Origin: Setoptus koraiensis
Lineage: Eukaryota; Animalia; Arthropoda
Reading direction: 5' to 3'
Assembly: GCA_048013815.1 (NCBI GenBank)
Contig: CM106585.1
Coordinates: 11,160,001 to 11,224,000 of the forward strand
DNA: 64,000 nucleotides
The notes under the pieces were generated by a model. That model did not search any database. It was not told where the DNA came from and saw only the letters and a program-made list of their open reading frames with translations. A program made the translations under genes and the position numbers. Shown here one piece after another: positions 1-8,251 of this stretch (position 1 is its first letter; each line of letters starts with the position of its first letter).

Positions 1-496
1 GGTATGTCCATGACCGGATCGCGGACCGGCGAAAAGCCCCCAAACAGATCGGATATCCGCGCCCGATGCTCGCAGCGAGATCGGGCGTAAAGAGTGAGCG
101 CATGGCCGCTCGGCCACCAAGTGGCCAGAACAAAAAGAAAATAATATATTTATATTCAACACACTGCAACACATGTGACAGCATTTACCTGGTTGCGCCG
201 CTACCTGTAGCAACGAAATGTGTGAAAATATTAAAATGAGAAGACAATCAGTCGCCATCGTCATCATCGGATCCCTTGTTTTTTGATCCCTGTTACGTAT
301 TTCAATATTTATATTAATATTACTATTATCATTACAAACTGTAATAGTTTATTATTGCCAATATTATTAGTAGATAATCACTAAGCACAGCAACGCTACA
401 AATGATATTAATATACCATCTATTATTATAACAGGTTAACAATGTTATTATCTTATTCTTTTGCGAACAATATCGAGAGTGCTGCAGTTGGTAAGC

Positions 497-733
497 ATGC
501 AGTCTAGAACAAGGAAGCCCAAAAGACAGGTCCAGCAAACTATGCTTGCAAAAGAAAAAATTGAAAAAATACAAGACAAATTGAGTATATCAGAGAGATT
601 TGATCACGAACTAGAAATTAATTTAGCACAACAACGAGTTGACCTCAATAAAAAAAGAACCAAGGAATTCATTGATATTCAATTAAAATTAAAGGATTAC
701 GATTGGATGTACAAGAAATTATGCCTTACTTAG
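497..733 (+). CDS. Small 78-aa coiled-coil-type ORF, weakly APC16 (ANAPC16/EMB-1)-like; stop codon overlaps the SRP9 start
   Basis: ATG at 497, TAG at 731-733. C-terminal KKRTKEFIDIQLKLKDYDWMYK resembles the R..[ED][LF]..L...L..D[ED]W.[FY]K end of APC16 proteins, and an upstream SERF word is also present in human ANAPC16 (recalled, not searched). Confidence 0.45.
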   Translation: MQSRTRKPKRQVQQTMLAKEKIEKIQDKLSISERFDHELEINLAQQRVDLNKKRTKEFIDIQLKLKDYDWMYKKLCLT

Positions 734-951
734 CGAATTGGGAGGAGTATAGTAAGCAGGCTCAAGAGTTGTATGATAAAAATCCAATGGGGTGCCGTGT
801 CGTATTTAAATACAGACACAACGATGGTCGCCTTGTGCTCAAGGTGACAGACAATAAAACATGTCTCCTATATCTAGCGGAGCAAGCTCAAGATGTCAAA
901 AAGATAGATAAGCTATTGTCCGGTATGATGCGAAATATGGTGTGCAAATAA
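721..951 (+). CDS. SRP9: Signal recognition particle 9 kDa protein (76 aa, intronless)
   Basis: MPYLANWEEYSKQAQELY...RVVFKYRHNDGRLVLKVTDNKTCLLY...QAQDVKKIDK matches the SRP9 family throughout. The true ATG is at 721; the ORF track starts at a TTG at 703. Confidence 0.96.
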   Translation: MPYLANWEEYSKQAQELYDKNPMGCRVVFKYRHNDGRLVLKVTDNKTCLLYLAEQAQDVKKIDKLLSGMMRNMVCK

Positions 952-1249
952 ATATTATCACGATAAAATAAAGTTTAGGATGATGGATATATATAAACAC
1001 GCTACAATTCTGATTCAATGCACACAATAAAATGCCACACATATTGAATGCAAACAGTAAATTACTTCATTTACTAGATTTTATATAATATTCATATTCA
1101 GAATATTTATTTATTAAACAATATATTACATACACATTTGCATACATCTCATCAGAGTTGATTCAATATCCACATCAAAGATCGATAATCACATTGGGGA
1201 ACATTTCATGGTGAAAACAATAGACACCCGGCCTCGGGAGTATCACTGT

Positions 1250-2761
1250 CTACGGGGATACAGCTCTCTGTTTTTCTTCTGAATCAGATTCATATTGTCG
1301 CATTCGTGCCTCAACTAATGGTCTGAAGTGTCTAATCAATCCTTGTATGGGCCAAGCTGCGCCATCGCCCAAGGCACATATTGTGTGGCCTTCAATCTGT
1401 TTTGATATTTCATATAGCATGTCAATCTCTTCGGGCCTTGCATTGCCATCGACGAATCTCCACATGATCTTATTCATCCAATCTACTCCTTCTCTGCAAG
1501 GGGTACACTGGCCACAGCTCTCATGTTTGTAGAACTCAGTTAGCCTTGCTATGGCTTTGATTATATCAGTTTGTTTGTTCATAACAATAATCGCTGCGGT
1601 ACCAAGACCTGTCTGAGCTTGAATTAATGAGTCAAAGTCCATAAGCACAGTTTCACAAGTGTCTTTCGGTATGACAGGCGTGGATGATCCACCAGGTATT
1701 ATGCCCAGTAGGTTGTCCCAACCCCCAAGAACACCACCAGCGTGACGCTCTATCAATTCTTTTAGAGGTATCGACATTTCCTCCTCTACAGTGCACGGAT
1801 TATTTACGTGTCCAGAAATATTGAACAGTTTTGTGCCTGTGTTGCGGGGTCTTCCTAAACCAGCGAACCATGAGCCCGTTCGACGGCAGATAGTTGGTGC
1901 AACGGCAACAGTTTCTACATTAGCCACTGTAGTGGGACATCCGAATACTCCTACGTCAGCTGGAAACGGGGGTTTCAATCGAGGTTTTCCTTGTTTTCCT
2001 TCTAGTGATTCGATGAGAGCAGTCTCTTCACCGCAGATATACGCTCCAGCCCCGCGATGTACATAAACATCGAAATCATACCCGGAACCGCAAGCGTTTT
2101 TTCCTATATAACCTGCCTTATAAGCTTCATTGATTGCAACATGTAGATTACAGCTTTCGTTGTAAAACTCTCCTCTTATGTAGATGTAGGCAGCTCGAGC
2201 TCCCATGGCTCGGCCGGCAACTAGACAGCCCTCGACTAGTTTGTGTGGGTCATGGCGCATGATTTCTCTGTCCTTGCATGTGCCCGGTTCTCCCTCGTCG
2301 GCATTAACAACTAGATATTTCGGTCTACCGTCACTGGGTTTGTTCATGAAGCTCCATTTCATTCCAGTCGGAAATCCCGCACCGCCTCGACCGCGCAATC
2401 CAGATTCTTTTATTTCATTTATAATCCATTCGTGGCCTTTGTTTAGAATCTCTTTGGTTTTATACCAATCGCCCTAGGATTAGTAAGAACAAAAATCAAG
2501 ATTATCAACATTTGTATTATAAGAGAGTAGAACGATTTTTCAATAATTCTTTGTGGCTCTTCTTTCATAGACCACCAAAAAACTTACCCTCGATTCGGCT
2601 CCTTTCAGTCTCCACTCGTGTCTCCCGTACAAATTTGTGAATATTCTATCCTGATCTTTCAAAGGTCCTCCGCGAGTCTTGGCCGCGGTCGCGGTCGAGC
2701 TCGATCTCGCCACTATCTGAAATAGCTGCCATGGAGAGGCCTTTAGCAAATTGTTTTGCAT
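1250..2761 (-). CDS. NDUFV1: NADH dehydrogenase [ubiquinone] flavoprotein 1 (51 kDa complex I subunit), 465 aa; exons 2761-2588 and 2473-1250
   Basis: [21 protein letters not shown] (NADH/FMN site), [13 protein letters not shown] and the [10 protein letters not shown]...C 4Fe-4S motif. A 114-bp phase-0 GTAAGT...CTAG intron joins ESR|GDWYKTKEI. Confidence 0.98.
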
Positions 2762-3608
2762 TTCGGTTGAGCTTCTATCGATGCAATATGTGGTATAAAA
2801 ACAACCTTAGTGGATTTATTTCATAAATATAGGTCCAGATTATTTTTGTTAGATAAAAAAGCGTCAAGGTGATTCAGTTTTGTTGTTGTCTTGCGTGACA
2901 AATTTTTGTCTTATGCTGTAAAGAGCACTCTGTGCCTATTGTGCACACGTCTCTCATTTGCGCGCAGGATCGCCTATTGTTTGCGCCTCTTACAATGTAC
3001 TTTTCAGGTTTACTAAAACAACCGCGAGAGGCTCTGCTTAGCTGCCCTGAAACGAGGACGTACTTAAGTCTGCATAGAAGCTACCGACAGACAACAGTGA
3101 ATGCTCGGGCTCACCCCAAGAAGCTCCTGCGCTTTCCTGCTTTACTGAATGCCAGAGCAAGCGATCAGACAGAGTAAACATTTATCGAGACAGTCCACCA
3201 TCAATTGTTCAATTTAAAACCGTTTCCAGAGCCTCTACCGGATATTTTTGTAAACCGGGTTAAGTAAATTGGATAAAGGACAAACAATAGAAATGAGCAG
3301 AGCTTAGGTACTCCAGGGCAGAGATAGAGTGGGTCGGTCCACAGCGATGGCTTCACATTACGAAATCACTTGACAGAATAAACATCATCATTATAAATCA
3401 GGAAACAACAAAACTATATCACCTTCATTTGACGCTTTTAACTCACTCAATAAAAATTCAATAACAAACATATTGAAATTCTTTTTAGATCACATATTGT
3501 ACATCGACAGAAGATCAACCGAAATGCAAAACAATCTAATTCGAGTTTCTCGGTCGCAGCTATTTCAGATAGTGACCAGAGCGAACTCGAGCGCGACACA
3601 GGCTCGAC
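2676..3608. repeat. Diverged inverted duplication (arms approx. 2676-2890 and 3404-3608) covering promoter, 5'UTR and mitochondrial presequence of NDUFV1 and SDHB
   Basis: On the sense strands the genes share identical blocks TCAACCGAAATGCAAAACAAT (21 nt) and GCAGCTATTTCAGATAGTG (19 nt), a shared CACATATTG and an upstream AACAACAAAACT...TCACCTT...TGACGCTTTT block. Confidence 0.9.
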
Positions 3609-4405
3609 ATGACTTAGGTCCGAAAGGATCCGAATTGAAGGCTAAAGGAGAGAAGAAAATCAAAAAATTCAGTATCTATCGATGGGATCCCGACAATGCC
3701 CACGTTAAACCACATCTTCAAACCTACGAGGTTGACCTAAATTCTTGTGGTCCTATGGTATTGGACGCATTGTTCAAAATCAAAAATGAATTAGATCCCA
3801 CACTAACATTCAGACGGTCCTGTCGTGAAGGAATTTGTGGATCATGTGCAATGAACATTAATGGCACTAACAATCTTGCATGCATATGTAAGATCGATAA
3901 AGATAGTGACAAACCTATGAACATTTACCCCTTACCTCACATGTATGTCATCAAGGATCTGGTTCCTGACATGAACAACTTCTATGAACAATACAGATCT
4001 ATTCAACCTTGGCTACAACGTTCCGATGAGAATGTCACGGATCGCAAACAGAATCTACAGAGTGTAGATGACAGAAAGAAACTTGACGGATTGTACGAAT
4101 GTATTCTATGCGCCTGTTGTTCTACTGCTTGCCCCAGTTATTGGTGGAACGGCGATAAATATCTTGGCCCTGCAACACTAATGCAAGCTTACAGATGGGT
4201 CATCGACTCTCGTGATCAAGCCACCGATGAAAGACTTGATAACCTAAGAGATCCATTTTCTGTTTATCGTTGCCATACAATCATGAACTGCACACGGACG
4301 TGCCCGAAAGGCCTGAACCCTGGAATGGCGATAGGGGAATTGAAAAAGATTCTGTCTGGTTGGTCAACTAAGCAAAACCCAGAGCTTCAAGGACAAGCTC
4401 AGTAA
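3524..4405 (+). CDS. SDHB: Succinate dehydrogenase iron-sulfur subunit (complex II), 293 aa, intronless
   Basis: [23 protein letters not shown] (2Fe-2S), [17 protein letters not shown] and [17 protein letters not shown] cluster motifs. The true ATG is at 3524 (MQNNL...). Confidence 0.98.
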
Positions 4406-4761
4406 AATCGTATGGTGATAATGCAAAACACACGAGAAGAATAATACTTGGGCACTATTCGAGCATGTTGCCTATTTTAACTCGTGATCTCAATTTTAAT
4501 AACTTGAGCCTTCATTGAGCTCGAAGAGCTTTGACATTGTAGCAGTGGAAATCGTTGAAAACGAATAATAAACTGTCATGATGCTTTTAACCGAAAATTT
4601 GAATGGCAAATAATACCCAAAAAAGAGTGCACTTGTTTGTGTGAACTCAATTTTACTTAAGTAGCTTTTTCGCTTCCTCGACGGCCTGTTATTGTAGACG
4701 AAACACAAATAAGAAATACAAGATGAGATAATAGTGTGACTTTTATGGACTGGTCTGAATG

Positions 4762-5766
4762 TTATGTGGCAATATCACTTACCTCCTTATCGTCCCATTT
4801 GTCTGACGACGAAAACTTATCGACGACTTCTTTCAATAGGGCCACTGCACGTTCTTTGTCGCGCTTCAGAACGAACAACGTCTTGGCAATCATTACTTTG
4901 TTCTTGGAATAGAAGTCCTTATCAATCTCTTCGGCCTTCTCGAACATCTTCAAGGCAACCTCGATATCGGCATCAGGAAGAGCAGCAAAGGCTATGCTGG
5001 CTATCTTTCGTTCCCACCAGGTTACGTGGTAACAAGAGAAGTGCCATTCTCCCAGTAGATAGTAGCTTGTAGCATCGGTTGGTGCATACTCGATGGCTTT
5101 CTCCATATGAGTTCTTACATTGAGCACTTGAAGAACGCGTTCTTTTTGTCCCTTCAAAGTACTCACAGCGTCCAATAGTATAGCGGCCCACTTGTGAGCC
5201 AAGCCATTCTTGTCATCCAATTCCAGAGAATGCTGAATATGAAGATAGGCAGTGTTCAACAATTCTTCATATTTGTCTTTTTGATCTTTGATGGCCTTAG
5301 ATTGGGTGTATTCGCAACGAGCTACGCGCCACAGCACTTGTTCGTTGTCGTACCATCCTGTCTGTGATTTTAGCAACTCGATGACCTGGTCGTACTGTCC
5401 CTCATCGAACAGCGCATCAGACTTCTTCAGGGTGTCCCAAGTGACACCCTTAATATCGGTAGCTTGACCTTTATCCATGAAAGAAAAAGCTGCTGCTAGT
5501 AGAACCCCGTTGAATTTTCTCAGTAATAAAGGTTTGATGTGATGATTATATATCGCCAATAGATAATTGCTGTTTTTGGTGCGATCCCGAAACGTTACCA
5601 CTCTAAGGCTAGGCTTTGTTGGCCTGTTGAATTGTAACCTGTTCAAATTATCAACTTTTGCAAAATACTGACGATGTTTTTTTCTAATCTCGTTTATTAT
5701 CCTTGAAGATGTTTGTAATCTCGACGATTGTACTCTGATGGTATTGATAACGCTAAAAAGTGACAT
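4762..5766 (-). CDS. RMDN1: Regulator of microtubule dynamics (RMDN/FAM82-like) TPR protein, 334 aa
   Basis: DALFDEG...LWRVAR...AHKWAAILL...ERV......HMEKAIE..P.DAT..YLLGEW...V.WWERKIA..F..LP...ALKMFEKAE..FYSKN.VMIAK is the RMD1 family pattern. N-terminus looks like a basic targeting sequence. Paralogue assignment (RMDN1/2/3) is uncertain. Confidence 0.85.
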   Translation of the reverse strand: MSLFSVINTIRVQSSRLQTSSRIINEIRKKHRQYFAKVDNLNRLQFNRPTKPSLRVVTFRDRTKNSNYLLAIYNHHIKPLLLRKFNGVLLAAAFSFMDKGQATDIKGVTWDTLKKSDALFDEGQYDQVIELLKSQTGWYDNEQVLWRVARCEYTQSKAIKDQKDKYEELLNTAYLHIQHSLELDDKNGLAHKWAAILLDAVSTLKGQKERVLQVLNVRTHMEKAIEYAPTDATSYYLLGEWHFSCYHVTWWERKIASIAFAALPDADIEVALKMFEKAEEIDKDFYSKNKVMIAKTLFVLKRDKERAVALLKEVVDKFSSSDKWDDKEVSDIAT

Positions 5767-6052
5767 GACTGCCTAGATTAATTTCGATCTATGGCATATT
5801 GTTTATGTTTGGCTCACAGGTGGCTGAGCCCGTGAACAGCTTGTTGTTATGTTTCTCAGGATAGAACGCACTTTAGGATACTTTAGTGTAGTAGTGTGAT
5901 GAAGTGTGTTTAAAGCTCACAAATGATGCGCACGATTGGCTCAACAACAGATATCATCAAGATCGCTTCCGCTTATTCGGTGCGTATTAAAATTAAATAA
6001 ATTGTCAGAAAGGGGCTATCTATTTATTTATTACTATTTTGGAGGGGCAAAT

Positions 6053-6901
6053 TTACATTTTCTCTTTTTCTTGGCCTAAGTCTGATTGTCGTGAGGCAAA
6101 CACAATCTGACTGACTATGTCGTGTAATGGAACAAACTGTTGTACTCCATTGGCTCTACTTAAATCAGTCAAGCGAAGTACAGTGGACCCATTGGAGATG
6201 GGCCGAGTAACGGCCTCAAATGTTGGTAGGGACTCAATCACGGACTGAACGTCTTTCCAATCGCAAACTTCTGTATTTGATTTGTGCTGGGGGTTTTCGA
6301 TGTGCTCCCGCAAGGACTCCACCCTGCGGTCGCATAATTCGCAGTAAGGTCCTGGGCGCACTCTTTTAGTTTGGCAGTTTGTTTGGTTTGGTGTAGTGTT
6401 TGGAGTAATGTTTGGAGTAATGGACAGCGGAATTGGTTTTGTTAATCTAATGAGGTTTGGTTCGGGCCATCTGGTGAACTCCGCGCATACGGGCCTATAT
6501 TTTCCCTCTAGATCCTCGCATTTGAGAAAGGGTGGCCTCAAGTCGCGGGCATTGTGCTTGTTTTCATCATCGTCGTCCTCGCTCCAATTAGATGATAGGA
6601 AATTTCTACAAAAGGCGAGACATTTGTCGGCGCTCATCAATTTAATACCCGCCTTCTTGGCCCTAGTTAAAAATGGATCAGATCCATTACTACCGTCTAC
6701 ATCGTCTTCCTTAGGCCAATTCTCTTCGGGTACGTCCGTCACTAGGTAGGCCTTCTTGTCTAGGAACTGTTCTACTCTGCCTTCGAATTCTTTAATAAGC
6801 CTCTTCAGGCTATCCTCTAATTGTGATGAGTATCTGATATCTAAATAGAAATTCTTGTTGGCGAATATATTCTTCTTCTTCTTTTCGCTCGACATGTTCA
6901 T
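6053..6901 (-). CDS. DBF4: Dbf4/ASK/Chiffon-like activator of Cdc7 kinase, compact (282 aa)
   Basis: Motif N (FYLD...GRVEQFLDKKAYLVTD), motif M (LRPPFLKCEDLEGKYRP...F...P) and a Dbf4-type zinc finger (YCELC...ESLREHIENPQH...W..V..VI), in the expected order. Confidence 0.85.
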   Translation of the reverse strand: MNMSSEKKKKNIFANKNFYLDIRYSSQLEDSLKRLIKEFEGRVEQFLDKKAYLVTDVPEENWPKEDDVDGSNGSDPFLTRAKKAGIKLMSADKCLAFCRNFLSSNWSEDDDDENKHNARDLRPPFLKCEDLEGKYRPVCAEFTRWPEPNLIRLTKPIPLSITPNITPNTTPNQTNCQTKRVRPGPYCELCDRRVESLREHIENPQHKSNTEVCDWKDVQSVIESLPTFEAVTRPISNGSTVLRLTDLSRANGVQQFVPLHDIVSQIVFASRQSDLGQEKEKM

Positions 6902-6964
6902 GGTGGACCACAGTTATTAGTTGAAATGTTTGAGAAAGAAGCTCCTCTTTTGAGATTATATTGA

Positions 6965-7043
6965 GTCCACCATATATTGGTCTTATCTTCACTTATAATT
7001 TTTGTGTCCACCATATATTGGTGTAATCTTCACTTATAATTTC
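6965..7043. repeat. Tandem duplication, 41-bp period, upstream of DBF4
   Basis: GTCCACCATATATTGGT(C/G)T(T/A)ATCTTCACTTATAATTT at 6965 and 7006. Confidence 0.9.
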
Positions 7044-7580
7044 GTGAAAATCGTTGCACACAAACTAGTGTTCTCGCCACCGAAAACCAAAACACAAAAC
7101 AGAGCGCGACTATCAAAAGCACAAAACAAACACATTCCTATGTACGCACCCATTCAAAACAAGGCGCTCATTTGACCATACACAGCACACACCGTACCAT
7201 GTTCTGTGAACAATCGGCAGATTTGGCGGCAGGATAGCGTCCAGTTTTAACTGCGGCAAACGCCAAGTGTTGCCATCAAAATCACCACTGTTAATTAGTC
7301 AACAGTCATTGGCCATTTTTACCGGCAGAGGCTACCATTGTGACAAAAGCGGCGTGTCATTAATTTTACAGGGCCCACATTGTATCGGCCGCAAGAGGGC
7401 TCTGTATAGATATATATAATTGGCACCATATATGAACAAACAAGTGAAATGAGGAACAGAAACGACAACGAAAAGCCCAATTGCCAGACTGAGGACGGCG
7501 ACTTGTTCTGTCGTGATGAAGTGGCAAAGTCTTGTGTAACATTGATTATAATAATTTGGAGCTTTATTATTAGTAGTGGC

Positions 7581-8251
7581 TTAGAATCTCAGCTTGCTGA
7601 AGAACCACTTATTTTTGCCTGTTTTGTAGCGTTCTTGGAACTTGGTTTTGATTTCGCCTCTGGCTTTCCTGCGTTTTGCCTTGTCCTTGAGAACGTCTCT
7701 TGCTGTGACAGTTTTGTCGAATTGAATATCAACAAGGTATCTTGTGGGCATCAAGTGACTGTAGTTGTAGCATTTAATGAATGGCTTGACACGGCAACGC
7801 TTCTTTCTCACCTCCTTATTGTGCAGTCGGTAGATCGGTTTCGGGTATCTATCAATGCCGGCCACAATTGCGTGCCCGTAGCTCTTTTCGGAGTTACCGT
7901 CATCGTGGTTCTAAATTACAATTAGAGTGGAATGAACAGAAATTGAGTCGAATGACGCATAGGAATAGAATTGAAATTATGAAATTAGTGTTTGGTCACC
8001 GTTAAAGGGTAATGTGTAGTAGCGATTCATGACACATTTATGGTCGTGTTTTTGTCAATTGTGATACCAAGAGGCTCTCTAGCGTGGATCTTTCTCTCTC
8101 CATAGCTACAATATATAATCTATATTCAATGTGTATATGTGGGCTCCATCACAAGACCAGATGCTCTTACCTTAAGGATGACTGCCTTCCTTCCAGCGTA
8201 TCTACCGGCCAAAATGATGACCACCTTGCTTGGCTTCATAATCTTTCCCAT
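7581..8251 (-). CDS. RPL27: 60S ribosomal protein L27 (eL27), 136 aa; exons 8251-8171 and 7910-7581
   Basis: [27 protein letters not shown]|NHDDG...GIDRYP...[10 protein letters not shown]...[15 protein letters not shown]. 260-bp phase-0 GTAAGA...TTTAG intron. Confidence 0.97.

What the first reader, a model, noticed from the sequence alone, without database searches (positions are those of the whole stretch)
2676..3608. Complex I (NDUFV1) and complex II (SDHB) subunits share one duplicated mitochondrial presequence cassette, head-to-head
Seen: two unrelated respiratory-chain genes are divergently transcribed 762 bp apart and start with homologous peptides, [27 protein letters not shown] and [27 protein letters not shown] (17/27 identical). 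The DNA forms an inverted repeat that includes identical 21-nt (5'UTR plus first codons) and 19-nt blocks with unchanged synonymous sites. Established: presequences of unrelated proteins are normally non-homologous; presequence capture by duplication is known for organelle-to-nucleus transfers in plants (sdh and rps genes), but I do not know of such a case for these animal genes. Inference: an inverted duplication gave one gene the other's promoter, UTR and targeting peptide. Faint similarity continues into GPLKD (conserved mature NDUFV1) versus GPKGS in intronless SDHB, which suggests NDUFV1 was the donor. The identical blocks hint at gene conversion or a shared RNA element that co-localises or co-regulates both mRNAs.
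Basis: partly seen in the sequence, partly recalled or inferred. Interest (0 to 1): 0.9.

Follow-up and report, generated by a model that had tools for sequence, protein, structure and literature searches.

The report
Respiratory genes sharing one import leader
In gall (eriophyoid) mites, two unrelated respiratory-chain genes, NDUFV1 of complex I and SDHB of complex II, start with copies of one promoter, leader and mitochondrial import signal, and within each species the two copies have stayed more alike than the same gene's copies are between species, which points to repeated copying between the neighbouring genes.

Summary
NDUFV1 (minus strand, ATG 2761) and SDHB (plus strand, ATG 3524) lie head to head, 762 nt apart. 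Their first 27 residues match at 17 positions. The DNA arms 2688-2887 and 3404-3597 are about 85% identical and include exact 21-nt and 19-nt blocks. A second pair of inverted blocks lies symmetrically about position 3131/3132.

Every related eriophyoid mite I could sample (nine species-level pairs) has a homologous leader on both genes. This holds whatever the arrangement: head to head, tandem in either order, or 5 kb apart. Outgroup mites, spiders and ticks do not share it. So the sharing is old, and this palindrome did not create it.

Leaders are 55% identical within a species but only 35% between orthologues, and lineage-specific insertions occur in both genes. That indicates episodic gene conversion or re-copying, with purifying selection on the peptide in between.

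In relatives both genes also carry a TTCTAGAA-type box 84-140 nt upstream. I found no other protein family with this leader.

Which gene donated the leader is unresolved. A shared RNA fold is not supported.

The scan has noted other presequence swaps elsewhere in this genome; I did not test those.

The parts
2588..2761 (-). NDUFV1 exon 1: the leader plus the first conserved mature residues ([28 protein letters not shown])
   Evidence: The ORF and a GTAAGT donor follow codon 58. Spliced to exon 2 it gives a 465-aa protein that aligns with NDUFV1 from end to end.
2474..2587 (-). NDUFV1 intron, phase 0, 114 nt
   Evidence: It starts GTAAGT and ends CCTAG, and the reading frame continues as [10 protein letters not shown]. 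The relatives' NDUFV1 genes are called as single ORFs with no intron here.
1250..2473 (-). NDUFV1 exon 2, running to the stop codon
   Evidence: ORF 1250-2398. It is 84-90% identical to arthropod NDUFV1 and carries Pfam Complex1_51K, SLBB_2 and NADH_4Fe-4S.
2681..2761 (-). NDUFV1 copy of the shared presequence (27 codons)
   Evidence: It matches the SDHB copy at 17 of 27 residues. It has 3 basic residues, no acidic residues, and Arg19 followed by small residues.
3524..3604 (+). SDHB copy of the shared presequence (27 codons)
   Evidence: Same comparison as the NDUFV1 copy, with 4 basic and 0 acidic residues. An RNA-type contig of run X11 starts at 3483 and covers it.
3524..4405 (+). SDHB coding sequence, intronless, 293 aa
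   Evidence: ORF. It is 70-86% identical to arthropod SDHB and carries Pfam Fer2_3 and Fer4 domains.
2688..2887 (-). Outer arm on the NDUFV1 side: promoter-proximal DNA, 5' UTR and 25 codons (-126..+74)
   Evidence: Local alignment scores 125 against about 21 for shuffles, with 154 of 182 positions identical.
3404..3597 (+). Outer arm on the SDHB side (-120..+74)
   Evidence: Same alignment as the NDUFV1-side arm.
2750..2770 (-). Exact 21-nt block spanning the start codon (-9..+12). Its partner is at 3515-3535 on the plus strand.
   Evidence: Only two matches in the window, with 0 expected.
2711..2729 (-). Exact 19-nt block (codons 12-17, QLFQIV). Its partner is at 3556-3574 on the plus strand.
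   Evidence: Only two matches in the window, with 0.01 expected.
2974..3036 (-). Inner inverted block, NDUFV1 side
   Evidence: It pairs with 3227-3290 at the same distance (95 nt) from the axis at 3131/3132. It scores 50 against 17 +/- 2.3 for shuffles.
3227..3290 (+). Inner inverted block, SDHB side
   Evidence: Same evidence as the NDUFV1-side inner block.
3037..3226 (.). Central spacer with no detectable symmetry
   Evidence: No arm-to-arm alignment, no Rfam hit, and no similarity to relatives' intergenic DNA by blast or tblastx.

Best explanation
The promoter-proximal DNA, the 5' UTR and the first 27-45 codons of NDUFV1 and SDHB are two copies of one 5' cassette. By composition, the coded part is a cleavable mitochondrial matrix-targeting presequence.

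The cassette was duplicated onto the second gene in or before the common ancestor of the sampled eriophyoid mites, replacing that gene's own start.

The two genes have stayed within about 0.3-5 kb of each other in a small gene block that is often rearranged. The two cassette copies have been re-homogenised from time to time by non-allelic gene conversion or re-copying. Between such events the peptide evolves under purifying selection.

In the window's species the genes lie head to head, so the two cassettes form an inverted repeat. The latest homogenisation left mosaic identical tracts from -126 to +74, plus inner blocks, which makes the intergenic region a degenerate palindrome.

The likely consequence is that both subunits are transcribed from like promoters and imported through the same signal.

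What is shown: the homology, its distribution across the clade, and the pattern of greater similarity within species than between species.

What is inferred: the conversion mechanism, the import function and any co-regulation.
For: Homology in the window.

Distribution across the clade. Both genes start with a homologous leader in L001, L005, L006, L007, L009, L010/L011, L015 and L017, in five different gene arrangements. A leader HMM splits 240 SDHB and NDUFV1 proteins cleanly. Thirty-eight proteins of both families score at least 24 bits, all from unnamed mite assemblies. All others score 15.6 bits or less, including Tetranychus, Panonychus, Halotydeus, spiders, ticks and insects. The mature proteins of the seven leader-bearing species that were in hand when the tree was built form a clade against trombidiform outgroups, with support 98/99.

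Concerted evolution. Mean leader identity is 0.545 within species, against 0.35 for SDHB-SDHB and 0.36 for NDUFV1-NDUFV1 between species. With 7 species the true pairing is the best of all 5,040 pairings. With 9 species only the true pairing reaches the observed value in 200,000 random pairings. Lineage-specific insertions occur in both genes: +4 aa in L009 and +8 aa in L010. Lineage-specific starts do too: MQNNL with QLFQIV in the window, MAAL with RRL in L005, and MSSLVLSMP in L010.

Tract evidence. L010 has a direct repeat 84% identical over about 340 nt, from about -200 to +135, ending exactly where the mature proteins begin. The window has exact 21-nt and 19-nt blocks.

Selection on the peptide. 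dN/dS is about 0.05 in L010, 0.28 in the window and 0.33 in L005. L005 keeps 18 of 34 residues but only 5 identical codons.

Presequence character. Every leader has 2-4 basic residues, no acidic residue in the first 28, 32-50% Ser/Thr/Ala, and a nearly invariant Arg at position 18-27 followed by small residues.

Shared promoter box. TTCTAGAA occurs 10 times in the relatives' loci, and 9 of these lie 84-140 nt upstream of the SDHB or NDUFV1 ATG. The NDUFV1 genes of L001 and L010 have the variant TTCCAGAA at the same place.
Against: No population or long-read data show a conversion tract directly.

In L001, L005, L006, L007 and L009 the DNA similarity between the two 5' regions is at or near the shuffle range. 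There the case rests on short peptides of about 30 residues.

In L007 the pair is only 34% identical.

L015 and L017 are close relatives and keep gene-specific leader features. Their NDUFV1 leaders are 70% identical to each other, which is more than either is to its own SDHB leader. Homogenisation is therefore episodic, not continuous.

The window lacks the TTCTAGAA box.

Import, cleavage and transcription start sites are untested. RNA evidence is limited to two small contigs over the SDHB ends in one run that is only presumed to be RNA.

The NDUFV1 N-terminus of Fragariocoptes, an eriophyoid with a named genome record, could not be obtained. Its SDHB has no NDUFV1 within 10 kb, so the age of the event is bounded only loosely.
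Confidence: 0.75

Rival explanations
1. One reading: one recent inverted duplication in this species gave one gene the other's promoter, UTR and presequence. On this model the sharing began with the palindrome.
For: The arms are inverted and symmetric about 3131/3132, and they include noncoding DNA. Among the four head-to-head loci tested for it (window, L005, L015, L017), only the window shows inverted DNA-level symmetry upstream of the ATG.
Against: Eight other species-level lineages share the leader in other arrangements. The window's NDUFV1 keeps the NDUFV1-type linker KTRGGPLKD that is seen in relatives.
Confidence: 0.05
2. One ancient duplication with no later exchange. Within-species likeness would come from parallel selection or from species-specific composition bias.
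For: Synonymous sites are saturated in L005 and L009 while the peptides stay alike. Presequences have a biased composition.
Against: Both genes share lineage-specific insertions and unusual motifs. Noncoding upstream DNA is shared in the window and in L010. Between species, SDHB leaders are no closer to each other (0.35) than they are to NDUFV1 leaders (0.34), so there is no orthology signal.
Confidence: 0.08
3. Repeated fresh captures. In several lineages one gene's 5' end was replaced anew by a new duplication of the neighbour's 5' end during local rearrangements, rather than by homology-dependent conversion.
For: Gene order and orientation differ in almost every species sampled. The downstream limit of homology varies: it reaches the mature junction in L010 but stops at about codon 25 in the window. 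Unchecked scan notes report other 5' swaps elsewhere in this genome.
Against: The data cannot separate this from long-tract conversion. The mosaic of short exact blocks in the window fits short conversion tracts better.
Confidence: 0.12
4. The leader is generic, for example carried by a mobile element or common to many mitochondrial genes of these mites.
For: None found. The scan's other swap notes involve different leaders.
Against: A leader HMM hits only SDHB and NDUFV1 in about 200 kb of six-frame translation. A 36-leader profile searched against 1.84 billion representative proteins found one NDUFV1-like fragment and one unrelated repeat protein. The exact blocks are unique in the window. 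One caveat applies: clustering at 50% identity can hide mite members inside clusters of conserved families.
Confidence: 0.03

Closest known systems
Presequence acquisition by duplication of an existing targeting signal in plants. Rice rps11-1 took its presequence from atp2, Arabidopsis sdh3 from hsp70, and carrot rps10 from hsp22 (Kadowaki et al. 1996 and others, as summarised in PMC2631504).
   Same: A non-homologous mitochondrial protein carries a copy of another gene's presequence, and the homology stops at the junction with the mature protein.
   Different: The plant cases follow recent organelle-to-nucleus gene transfer, where the incoming gene had no signal. Here two ancient nuclear genes of an animal are involved, so one of them must have lost its own working signal. 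The copy includes promoter-proximal DNA. The two copies also evolve in concert across a whole clade.
Common use of one presequence by SDHB (SDH2) and RPS14 through alternative splicing in rice and maize (Kubo et al. 1999 and Figueroa et al. 1999, cited in PMC2631504).
   Same: SDHB's targeting signal serves a second, unrelated mitochondrial protein.
   Different: In the plants a single genomic copy is shared by splicing. Here there are two genomic copies, each contiguous with its own gene, on opposite strands or in tandem.
Concerted evolution of linked repeats and palindrome arms by intrachromosomal gene conversion, for example the arms of sex-chromosome palindromes (from my own knowledge, not checked here).
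   Same: Copies within a species are more alike than orthologous copies between species. The copies are physically close. The window has an inverted-repeat geometry.
   Different: The homogenised unit is only a 5' module of about 100-350 nt, attached to two otherwise unrelated genes, so each tract must stop at the mature coding sequence.
Other 5'-cassette and presequence swaps noted by this scan in the same genome: NDUFS8 from citrate synthase, LRPPRC from STOML2, PNPase from eIF3g, NDUFAF4 and NDUFB11, and SCO1 and ZnT9 from mRpL22. These are AI notes and are unchecked.
   Same: Each is a copy of a neighbour's upstream region, leader and first codons placed on another mitochondrial gene in the same mite.
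   Different: Where a follow-up summary exists, those cases are described as one-off or recent swaps. This one is shared by all sampled relatives and shows repeated homogenisation.

Membership tests
Cleavable mitochondrial matrix-targeting presequence | An N-terminal extension that is absent from the conserved mature protein | tested here: met
   The leaders come before the conserved KxFxIYRW of SDHB and GPLKDxDRIF of NDUFV1 in all species.
Cleavable mitochondrial matrix-targeting presequence | Net positive charge, no acidic residues, rich in Ser/Thr/Ala/Leu | tested here: met
   Across 16 leaders there are 2-4 Lys/Arg, 0 Asp/Glu in the first 28 residues, and 32-50% Ser/Thr/Ala.
Cleavable mitochondrial matrix-targeting presequence | Amphipathic helix and a processing-peptidase site with Arg at -2 or -3 | tested here: inconclusive
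   The hydrophobic moment is 0.43-0.83 by a simple calculation. A nearly invariant Arg is followed by small residues. No dedicated predictor was available.
Cleavable mitochondrial matrix-targeting presequence | Directs import and is cleaved | not testable with these tools
   This needs import assays or N-terminal proteomics.
Presequence acquired by duplication of another gene's signal | Significant sequence homology between the presequences of non-homologous proteins | tested here: met
   The window scores 125 against 21 for shuffles. L010 scores 258 against 20.5.
Presequence acquired by duplication of another gene's signal | Outgroups have unrelated presequences on the two proteins | tested here: met
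   Tetranychus, Panonychus, Halotydeus, spiders and ticks all score 15.6 bits or less against the leader HMM, and their SDHB and NDUFV1 N-termini differ from each other.
Presequence acquired by duplication of another gene's signal | Donor and recipient can be identified | tested here: inconclusive
   Outgroup leaders of both genes resemble the shared leader only weakly. The window's SDHB has lost the SDHB-type linker QPKxEETQAPAK, while its NDUFV1 keeps the NDUFV1-type linker. A marginal match (p 0.01-0.05) links the SDHB linker to the end of NDUFV1 exon 1. Together these hint that the latest transfer in this lineage went from NDUFV1 to SDHB.
Concerted evolution by gene conversion | Paralogous copies are more alike within species than orthologous copies are between species | tested here: met
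   Identity is 0.545 within species against 0.35 and 0.36 between species. The true pairing is unique among 200,000 random pairings.
Concerted evolution by gene conversion | Both copies share lineage-specific indels or rare states | tested here: met
   L009 has a +4 aa insertion and L010 a +8 aa insertion in both genes. MQNNL, MAAL and MSSLVLSMP are lineage-specific starts found in both genes.
Concerted evolution by gene conversion | Discrete tracts of identity that include silent and noncoding sites | tested here: met
   The window has exact 21-nt and 19-nt blocks, and 14 of 17 conserved residues use the identical codon. The upstream region is about 85% identical in the window and in L010.
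Concerted evolution by gene conversion | Conversion events seen directly, as polymorphic tracts | not tested
The one variant seen, 3585 A>G in run X11, changes SDHB codon 21 to the codon that the NDUFV1 arm has. That is suggestive only.
Bidirectional (divergent) promoter pair | Two genes head to head, less than 1 kb apart | tested here: met
   762 nt in the window and 301 nt in L005.
Bidirectional (divergent) promoter pair | Divergent transcription from a shared regulatory region | not tested
   Only SDHB-end contigs were found in one presumed RNA run. Two plant-or-host-labelled RNA runs held none of this DNA.

The most novel reading that the evidence does not exclude
Eriophyoid mites keep a selectively maintained, shared 5' module on the flavoprotein subunit of complex I and the iron-sulfur subunit of complex II. 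The module comprises a promoter box, the 5' UTR and the import presequence. Recurrent exchange between the two genes keeps it uniform, so their expression and import are coupled. The module would be one visible product of a genome-wide tendency in these very compact genomes to swap 5' cassettes between neighbouring mitochondrial genes.
Probability: 0.4. Interest if true: 0.85.

Novelty: new variant of a known kind. Interest (0 to 1): 0.72.

Why it matters
Presequences are usually treated as gene-specific, fast-drifting and non-homologous between proteins. Copying of a presequence is documented mainly for plant genes that recently moved from the organelle to the nucleus.

Here two ancient, essential nuclear OXPHOS genes of an animal share one targeting module across a whole mite superfamily, and the module evolves in concert.

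If confirmed, this would show three things. A working import signal and promoter can be replaced in core respiratory genes. Short 5' modules can behave as a unit of concerted evolution between unrelated genes. And there would be a natural system for asking how much of a presequence is specific to its passenger protein, and whether a shared promoter and leader couples the supply of complex I and complex II.

The same loci also give a dated series of small rearrangements for studying how such cassettes move.

Tried and rejected
(1) Collinear extension of homology into GPLKD / GPKGS is not above shuffles. The best match downstream of +74 is non-collinear and marginal.

(2) A shared RNA structure is not supported. 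Z-scores are -2.9, -0.3, +0.3 and -0.2, the folds differ, and Rfam gives no hit in 1-8000.

(3) The generic-leader idea found no support. I ran a six-frame HMM scan of the window and 11 loci and a profile search of 1.84 billion representatives. A word-based search with region 1-40 of P0003 found only three close SDHBs and was uninformative.

(4) Polarity could not be read from outgroup leaders, because their scores are too low to decide.

(5) The other head-to-head species show no DNA palindrome. I first thought the roughly 760-nt spacing was conserved in L015 and L017. That is a coincidence, because a conserved micro-ORF gene lies between the two genes there.

(6) The window's inner inverted block does not align convincingly with the TTCTAGAA region of relatives.

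(7) The RNA-seq runs labelled with the same organism as some DNA holders contained essentially none of this DNA. They are probably host material, so no transcription start sites were obtained.

(8) A species tree built from the two mature proteins resolves the clade but not its internal branches. I could not decide whether the head-to-head order in the window and in L005 is shared or independent.

(9) Literature searches found no description of this case or of presequences in eriophyoid mites.

The single read-laying run used 3,301 letters.
Full report
**What is in the window**

NDUFV1 lies on the minus strand. Exon 1 is 2588-2761, a 114-nt GT..AG intron is 2474-2587, and exon 2 is 1250-2473, giving 465 aa. 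SDHB is an intronless ORF at 3524-4405 on the plus strand. Both identifications rest on 70-90% identity to arthropod orthologues and on the expected Pfam domains. The two start codons are 762 nt apart. The first 27 residues match at 17 positions.

**The inverted repeat**

The arms are real. The repeat finder gives 2688-2801 / 3484-3597, plus 2839-2887 / 3404-3457. A gapped local alignment covers -126..+74 against -120..+74, with 154 of 182 aligned positions identical. It scores 125, against 21 +/- 2.6 for shuffles and a maximum of 65 for random genomic pairs. The exact 21-nt and 19-nt blocks are unique in the window.

A further inverted pair, 2974-3036 / 3227-3290, sits exactly 95 nt on either side of an axis at 3131/3132. 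The whole intergenic region is therefore a degenerate palindrome around a 190-nt asymmetric core.

**Assembly and RNA evidence**

A 9,769-nt contig from a run filed under another sample and study spans 1200-4500 without a difference, though the tool warns it may be this DNA's own source. Several other runs hold most of the 31-mers. The arms are only about 76-85% alike, so an assembly collapse is not a concern.

In a run that is probably RNA, small contigs cover 3483-3694 and 4247-4497, which are the 5' and 3' ends of an SDHB message. The first begins 41 nt upstream of the ATG, inside the shared block.

**Which organism**

An earlier scan note calls this genome an eriophyoid (gall) mite. This fits my results: the nearest named SDHB is from Fragariocoptes, the next are trombidiform mites, and the closest hits of all come from unnamed assemblies.

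**The key comparative result**

I fetched the contigs that encode the closest SDHB and NDUFV1 relatives. Wherever both genes could be read, both begin with a homologous leader, whatever the arrangement:

- L001 and L007: SDHB(+), then TMA7 and another gene, then NDUFV1(+), 4-5 kb apart.
- L006: SDHB(+), TMA7(-), NDUFV1(+).
- L009: SDHB(+), NDUFV1(+).
- L010/L011: NDUFV1(+), SDHB(+).
- L005: NDUFV1(-) and SDHB(+) head to head, 301 nt apart.
- L015 and L016/L017: NDUFV1(-), a micro-ORF(-), then SDHB(+).

The leader consensus is MNSLxLxxKSKNLxxxAxRAASTAxAAQxK.

A leader HMM separates 38 proteins of both families, at 24 bits or more, from all the rest, at 15.6 bits or less. The rest include Tetranychus, Panonychus, Halotydeus, spiders, ticks and insects, whose SDHB and NDUFV1 N-termini are unrelated to each other. 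In a tree built when seven of the nine pairs were in hand, those seven leader-bearing species form a clade on their mature proteins, with support 98/99.

The sharing is therefore an old, clade-wide state. It is not a product of the window's palindrome.

**Concerted evolution**

- Within-species identity between the SDHB and NDUFV1 leaders averages 0.545.
- Between species, SDHB-SDHB identity is 0.35, NDUFV1-NDUFV1 is 0.36, and SDHB-NDUFV1 is 0.34. The leaders therefore carry no orthology signal.
- The true species pairing is the best of all 5,040 pairings with 7 species. With 9 species it is the only one to reach the observed value in 200,000 random pairings.
- The qualitative evidence is stronger still. 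A 4-residue insertion in L009 and an 8-residue insertion in L010 are present in both genes. The same holds for MQNNL with QLFQIV in the window, MAAL with RRL in L005, MSSLVLSMP in L010, and ASAAAA against ATAAAA in L015 and L017.
- In L010 the two 5' regions are 84% identical over about 340 nt as a direct repeat. The repeat runs from about 200 nt upstream to the last codon before each mature protein.

Homogenisation is episodic. The close relatives L015 and L017 retain gene-specific leader features, and their NDUFV1 leaders (70% identical) are closer to each other than to their own SDHB leaders. In L001, L005, L006 and L009 the DNA similarity has decayed to about the level of shuffles, while the peptides remain alike.

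**Selection**

Rough Nei-Gojobori estimates give dN/dS of about 0.05 in L010, 0.28 in the window and 0.33 in L005. In L005, 18 of 34 residues are conserved but only 5 codons are identical. The peptide is therefore constrained in both genes.

In L010 and in the window the upstream noncoding arms are about 85% identical over the aligned columns. This looks better conserved than synonymous sites, where dS is 0.8-0.9. It hints at constraint on the regulatory part or at more recent exchange there. The samples are small and local alignment favours conserved stretches, so I treat this only as a lead.

**What the cassette contains**

By composition the coded part is a typical matrix-targeting presequence. 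It has 2-4 basic residues, no acidic residues in the first 28, and abundant Ser/Thr/Ala. A nearly invariant Arg followed by small residues is compatible with a processing site. Import itself is untested.

Upstream, the relatives share a palindromic TTCTAGAA box, with TTCCAGAA or TTCTCGAA as variants. It is often preceded by GC-rich TGCG/GCGC motifs. Of 10 exact occurrences in the relatives' loci, 9 lie 84-140 nt upstream of an SDHB or NDUFV1 start. In L005 a single copy sits between the two divergent genes. The window has no exact copy.

The few bases around the ATG are the most persistently identical DNA between the two genes in several species: 21 nt in the window and 14 nt in L015, with further conservation in L009 (-16..+12).

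**How the window's palindrome probably arose (inference)**

The genes TMA7, a micro-ORF, SRP9, SDHB, NDUFV1, a zf-DBF gene and RPL27e form a small block whose order and orientation differ in almost every species. The window shares the tail-to-tail NDUFV1-SRP9 adjacency with L009, where SDHB lies in tandem upstream of NDUFV1. Inverting one gene in such an arrangement would bring the two already homologous cassettes head to head. Exchange between the arms would then produce the present mosaic.

The other three head-to-head loci tested (L005, L015, L017) show no inverted DNA symmetry upstream of the ATG. That part is therefore specific to the window's lineage.

**Polarity**

Two observations hint that the latest transfer in this lineage went from NDUFV1 to SDHB. 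First, the window's SDHB has lost the SDHB-type linker QPKxEETQAPAK that several relatives conserve, while its NDUFV1 keeps the NDUFV1-type linker. Second, the SDHB linker [10 protein letters not shown] matches [10 protein letters not shown] at the end of NDUFV1 exon 1, in frame, at p about 0.01-0.05.

The original donor in the clade's ancestor cannot be told from the outgroup leaders.

**Rivals**

- A generic leader or a mobile element found no support. The 50% clustering of the large library could hide carriers in conserved families.
- Pure parallel selection does not explain the shared insertions or the shared noncoding DNA.
- Fresh re-capture and homology-driven conversion cannot be separated with these data. 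I treat them as two forms of the same non-reciprocal copying.
- A shared RNA fold is not supported.

**Comparison with what is known**

[quoted passage not shown] SDHB shares its signal with RPS14 by alternative splicing in rice and maize (PMC2631504).

I found no report of two ancient nuclear OXPHOS genes of an animal sharing a duplicated promoter and presequence module, nor of such a module evolving in concert.

The scan has flagged other presequence swaps on other DNA of this same genome. I did not test those. If they hold, this locus is the oldest and most dynamic example of a general habit of these mites.

Noticed in passing
L001:9917-9924, L003:6975-6982, L005:6008-6015, L007:9890-9897, L008:7032-7039, L010:4301-4308: A palindromic TTCTAGAA box lies 84-140 nt upstream of the SDHB or NDUFV1 start in most relatives. 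Nine of its 10 occurrences in the relatives' loci are at these promoters, and the NDUFV1 genes of L001 and L010 have TTCCAGAA at the same place. The window has no exact copy. It resembles a heat-shock-element core, and which factor binds it is unknown.
   Followed up: partly
window 497-733 (+); L001:9640-9783 (-); L010:3882-4052 (-); L015:3330-3461 (-); L017:9334-9474 (-): The micro-ORF that another note calls APC16-like, just before SRP9 in the window, is conserved across relatives (tblastn E 2e-5 to 4e-2; L015 against L017 gives 2.5e-12). In L001, L010, L015 and L017 it lies head to head with SDHB. In L015 and L017 it ends about 72 nt upstream of the NDUFV1 start, in the position SRP9 occupies elsewhere, which may mean the two are co-transcribed.
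   Followed up: partly
window 2474-2587: The window's NDUFV1 has a 114-nt phase-0 intron between ...GAESR and GDWY.... All sampled relatives have an uninterrupted NDUFV1 ORF, so this is either intron gain or retention in a lineage otherwise poor in introns.
   Followed up: no
window 3606-3635 against 2593-2622: The SDHB linker [10 protein letters not shown] matches the end of NDUFV1 exon 1 ([10 protein letters not shown]), in frame but not collinear, with 22 of 30 nt identical and p about 0.01-0.05. It could be a remnant of a whole-exon copy followed by an internal deletion, or it could be chance.
   Followed up: partly
window 3585: Run X11 reads G instead of A here. That changes SDHB codon 21 from AAC (Asn) to AGC (Ser), the codon found at the mirrored position of the NDUFV1 arm. 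It could be the ancestral state or a polymorphic conversion.
   Followed up: no
window 1-7000 and loci L001-L017: The small block TMA7, micro-ORF, SRP9, SDHB, NDUFV1, zf-DBF gene and RPL27e is reshuffled in order and orientation in nearly every eriophyoid sampled. SDHB and NDUFV1 usually stay within 5 kb of each other, but in L003, L008 and Fragariocoptes (L012) no partner gene is found on the stretch of contig held (5-10 kb to each side).
   Followed up: partly
L015:3350-3505 and L017:9336-9487: A block of about 150 nt is conserved between the NDUFV1-SDHB intergenic regions of these two relatives (score 73 against 22 for shuffles). It is explained by the micro-ORF coding sequence.
   Followed up: yes
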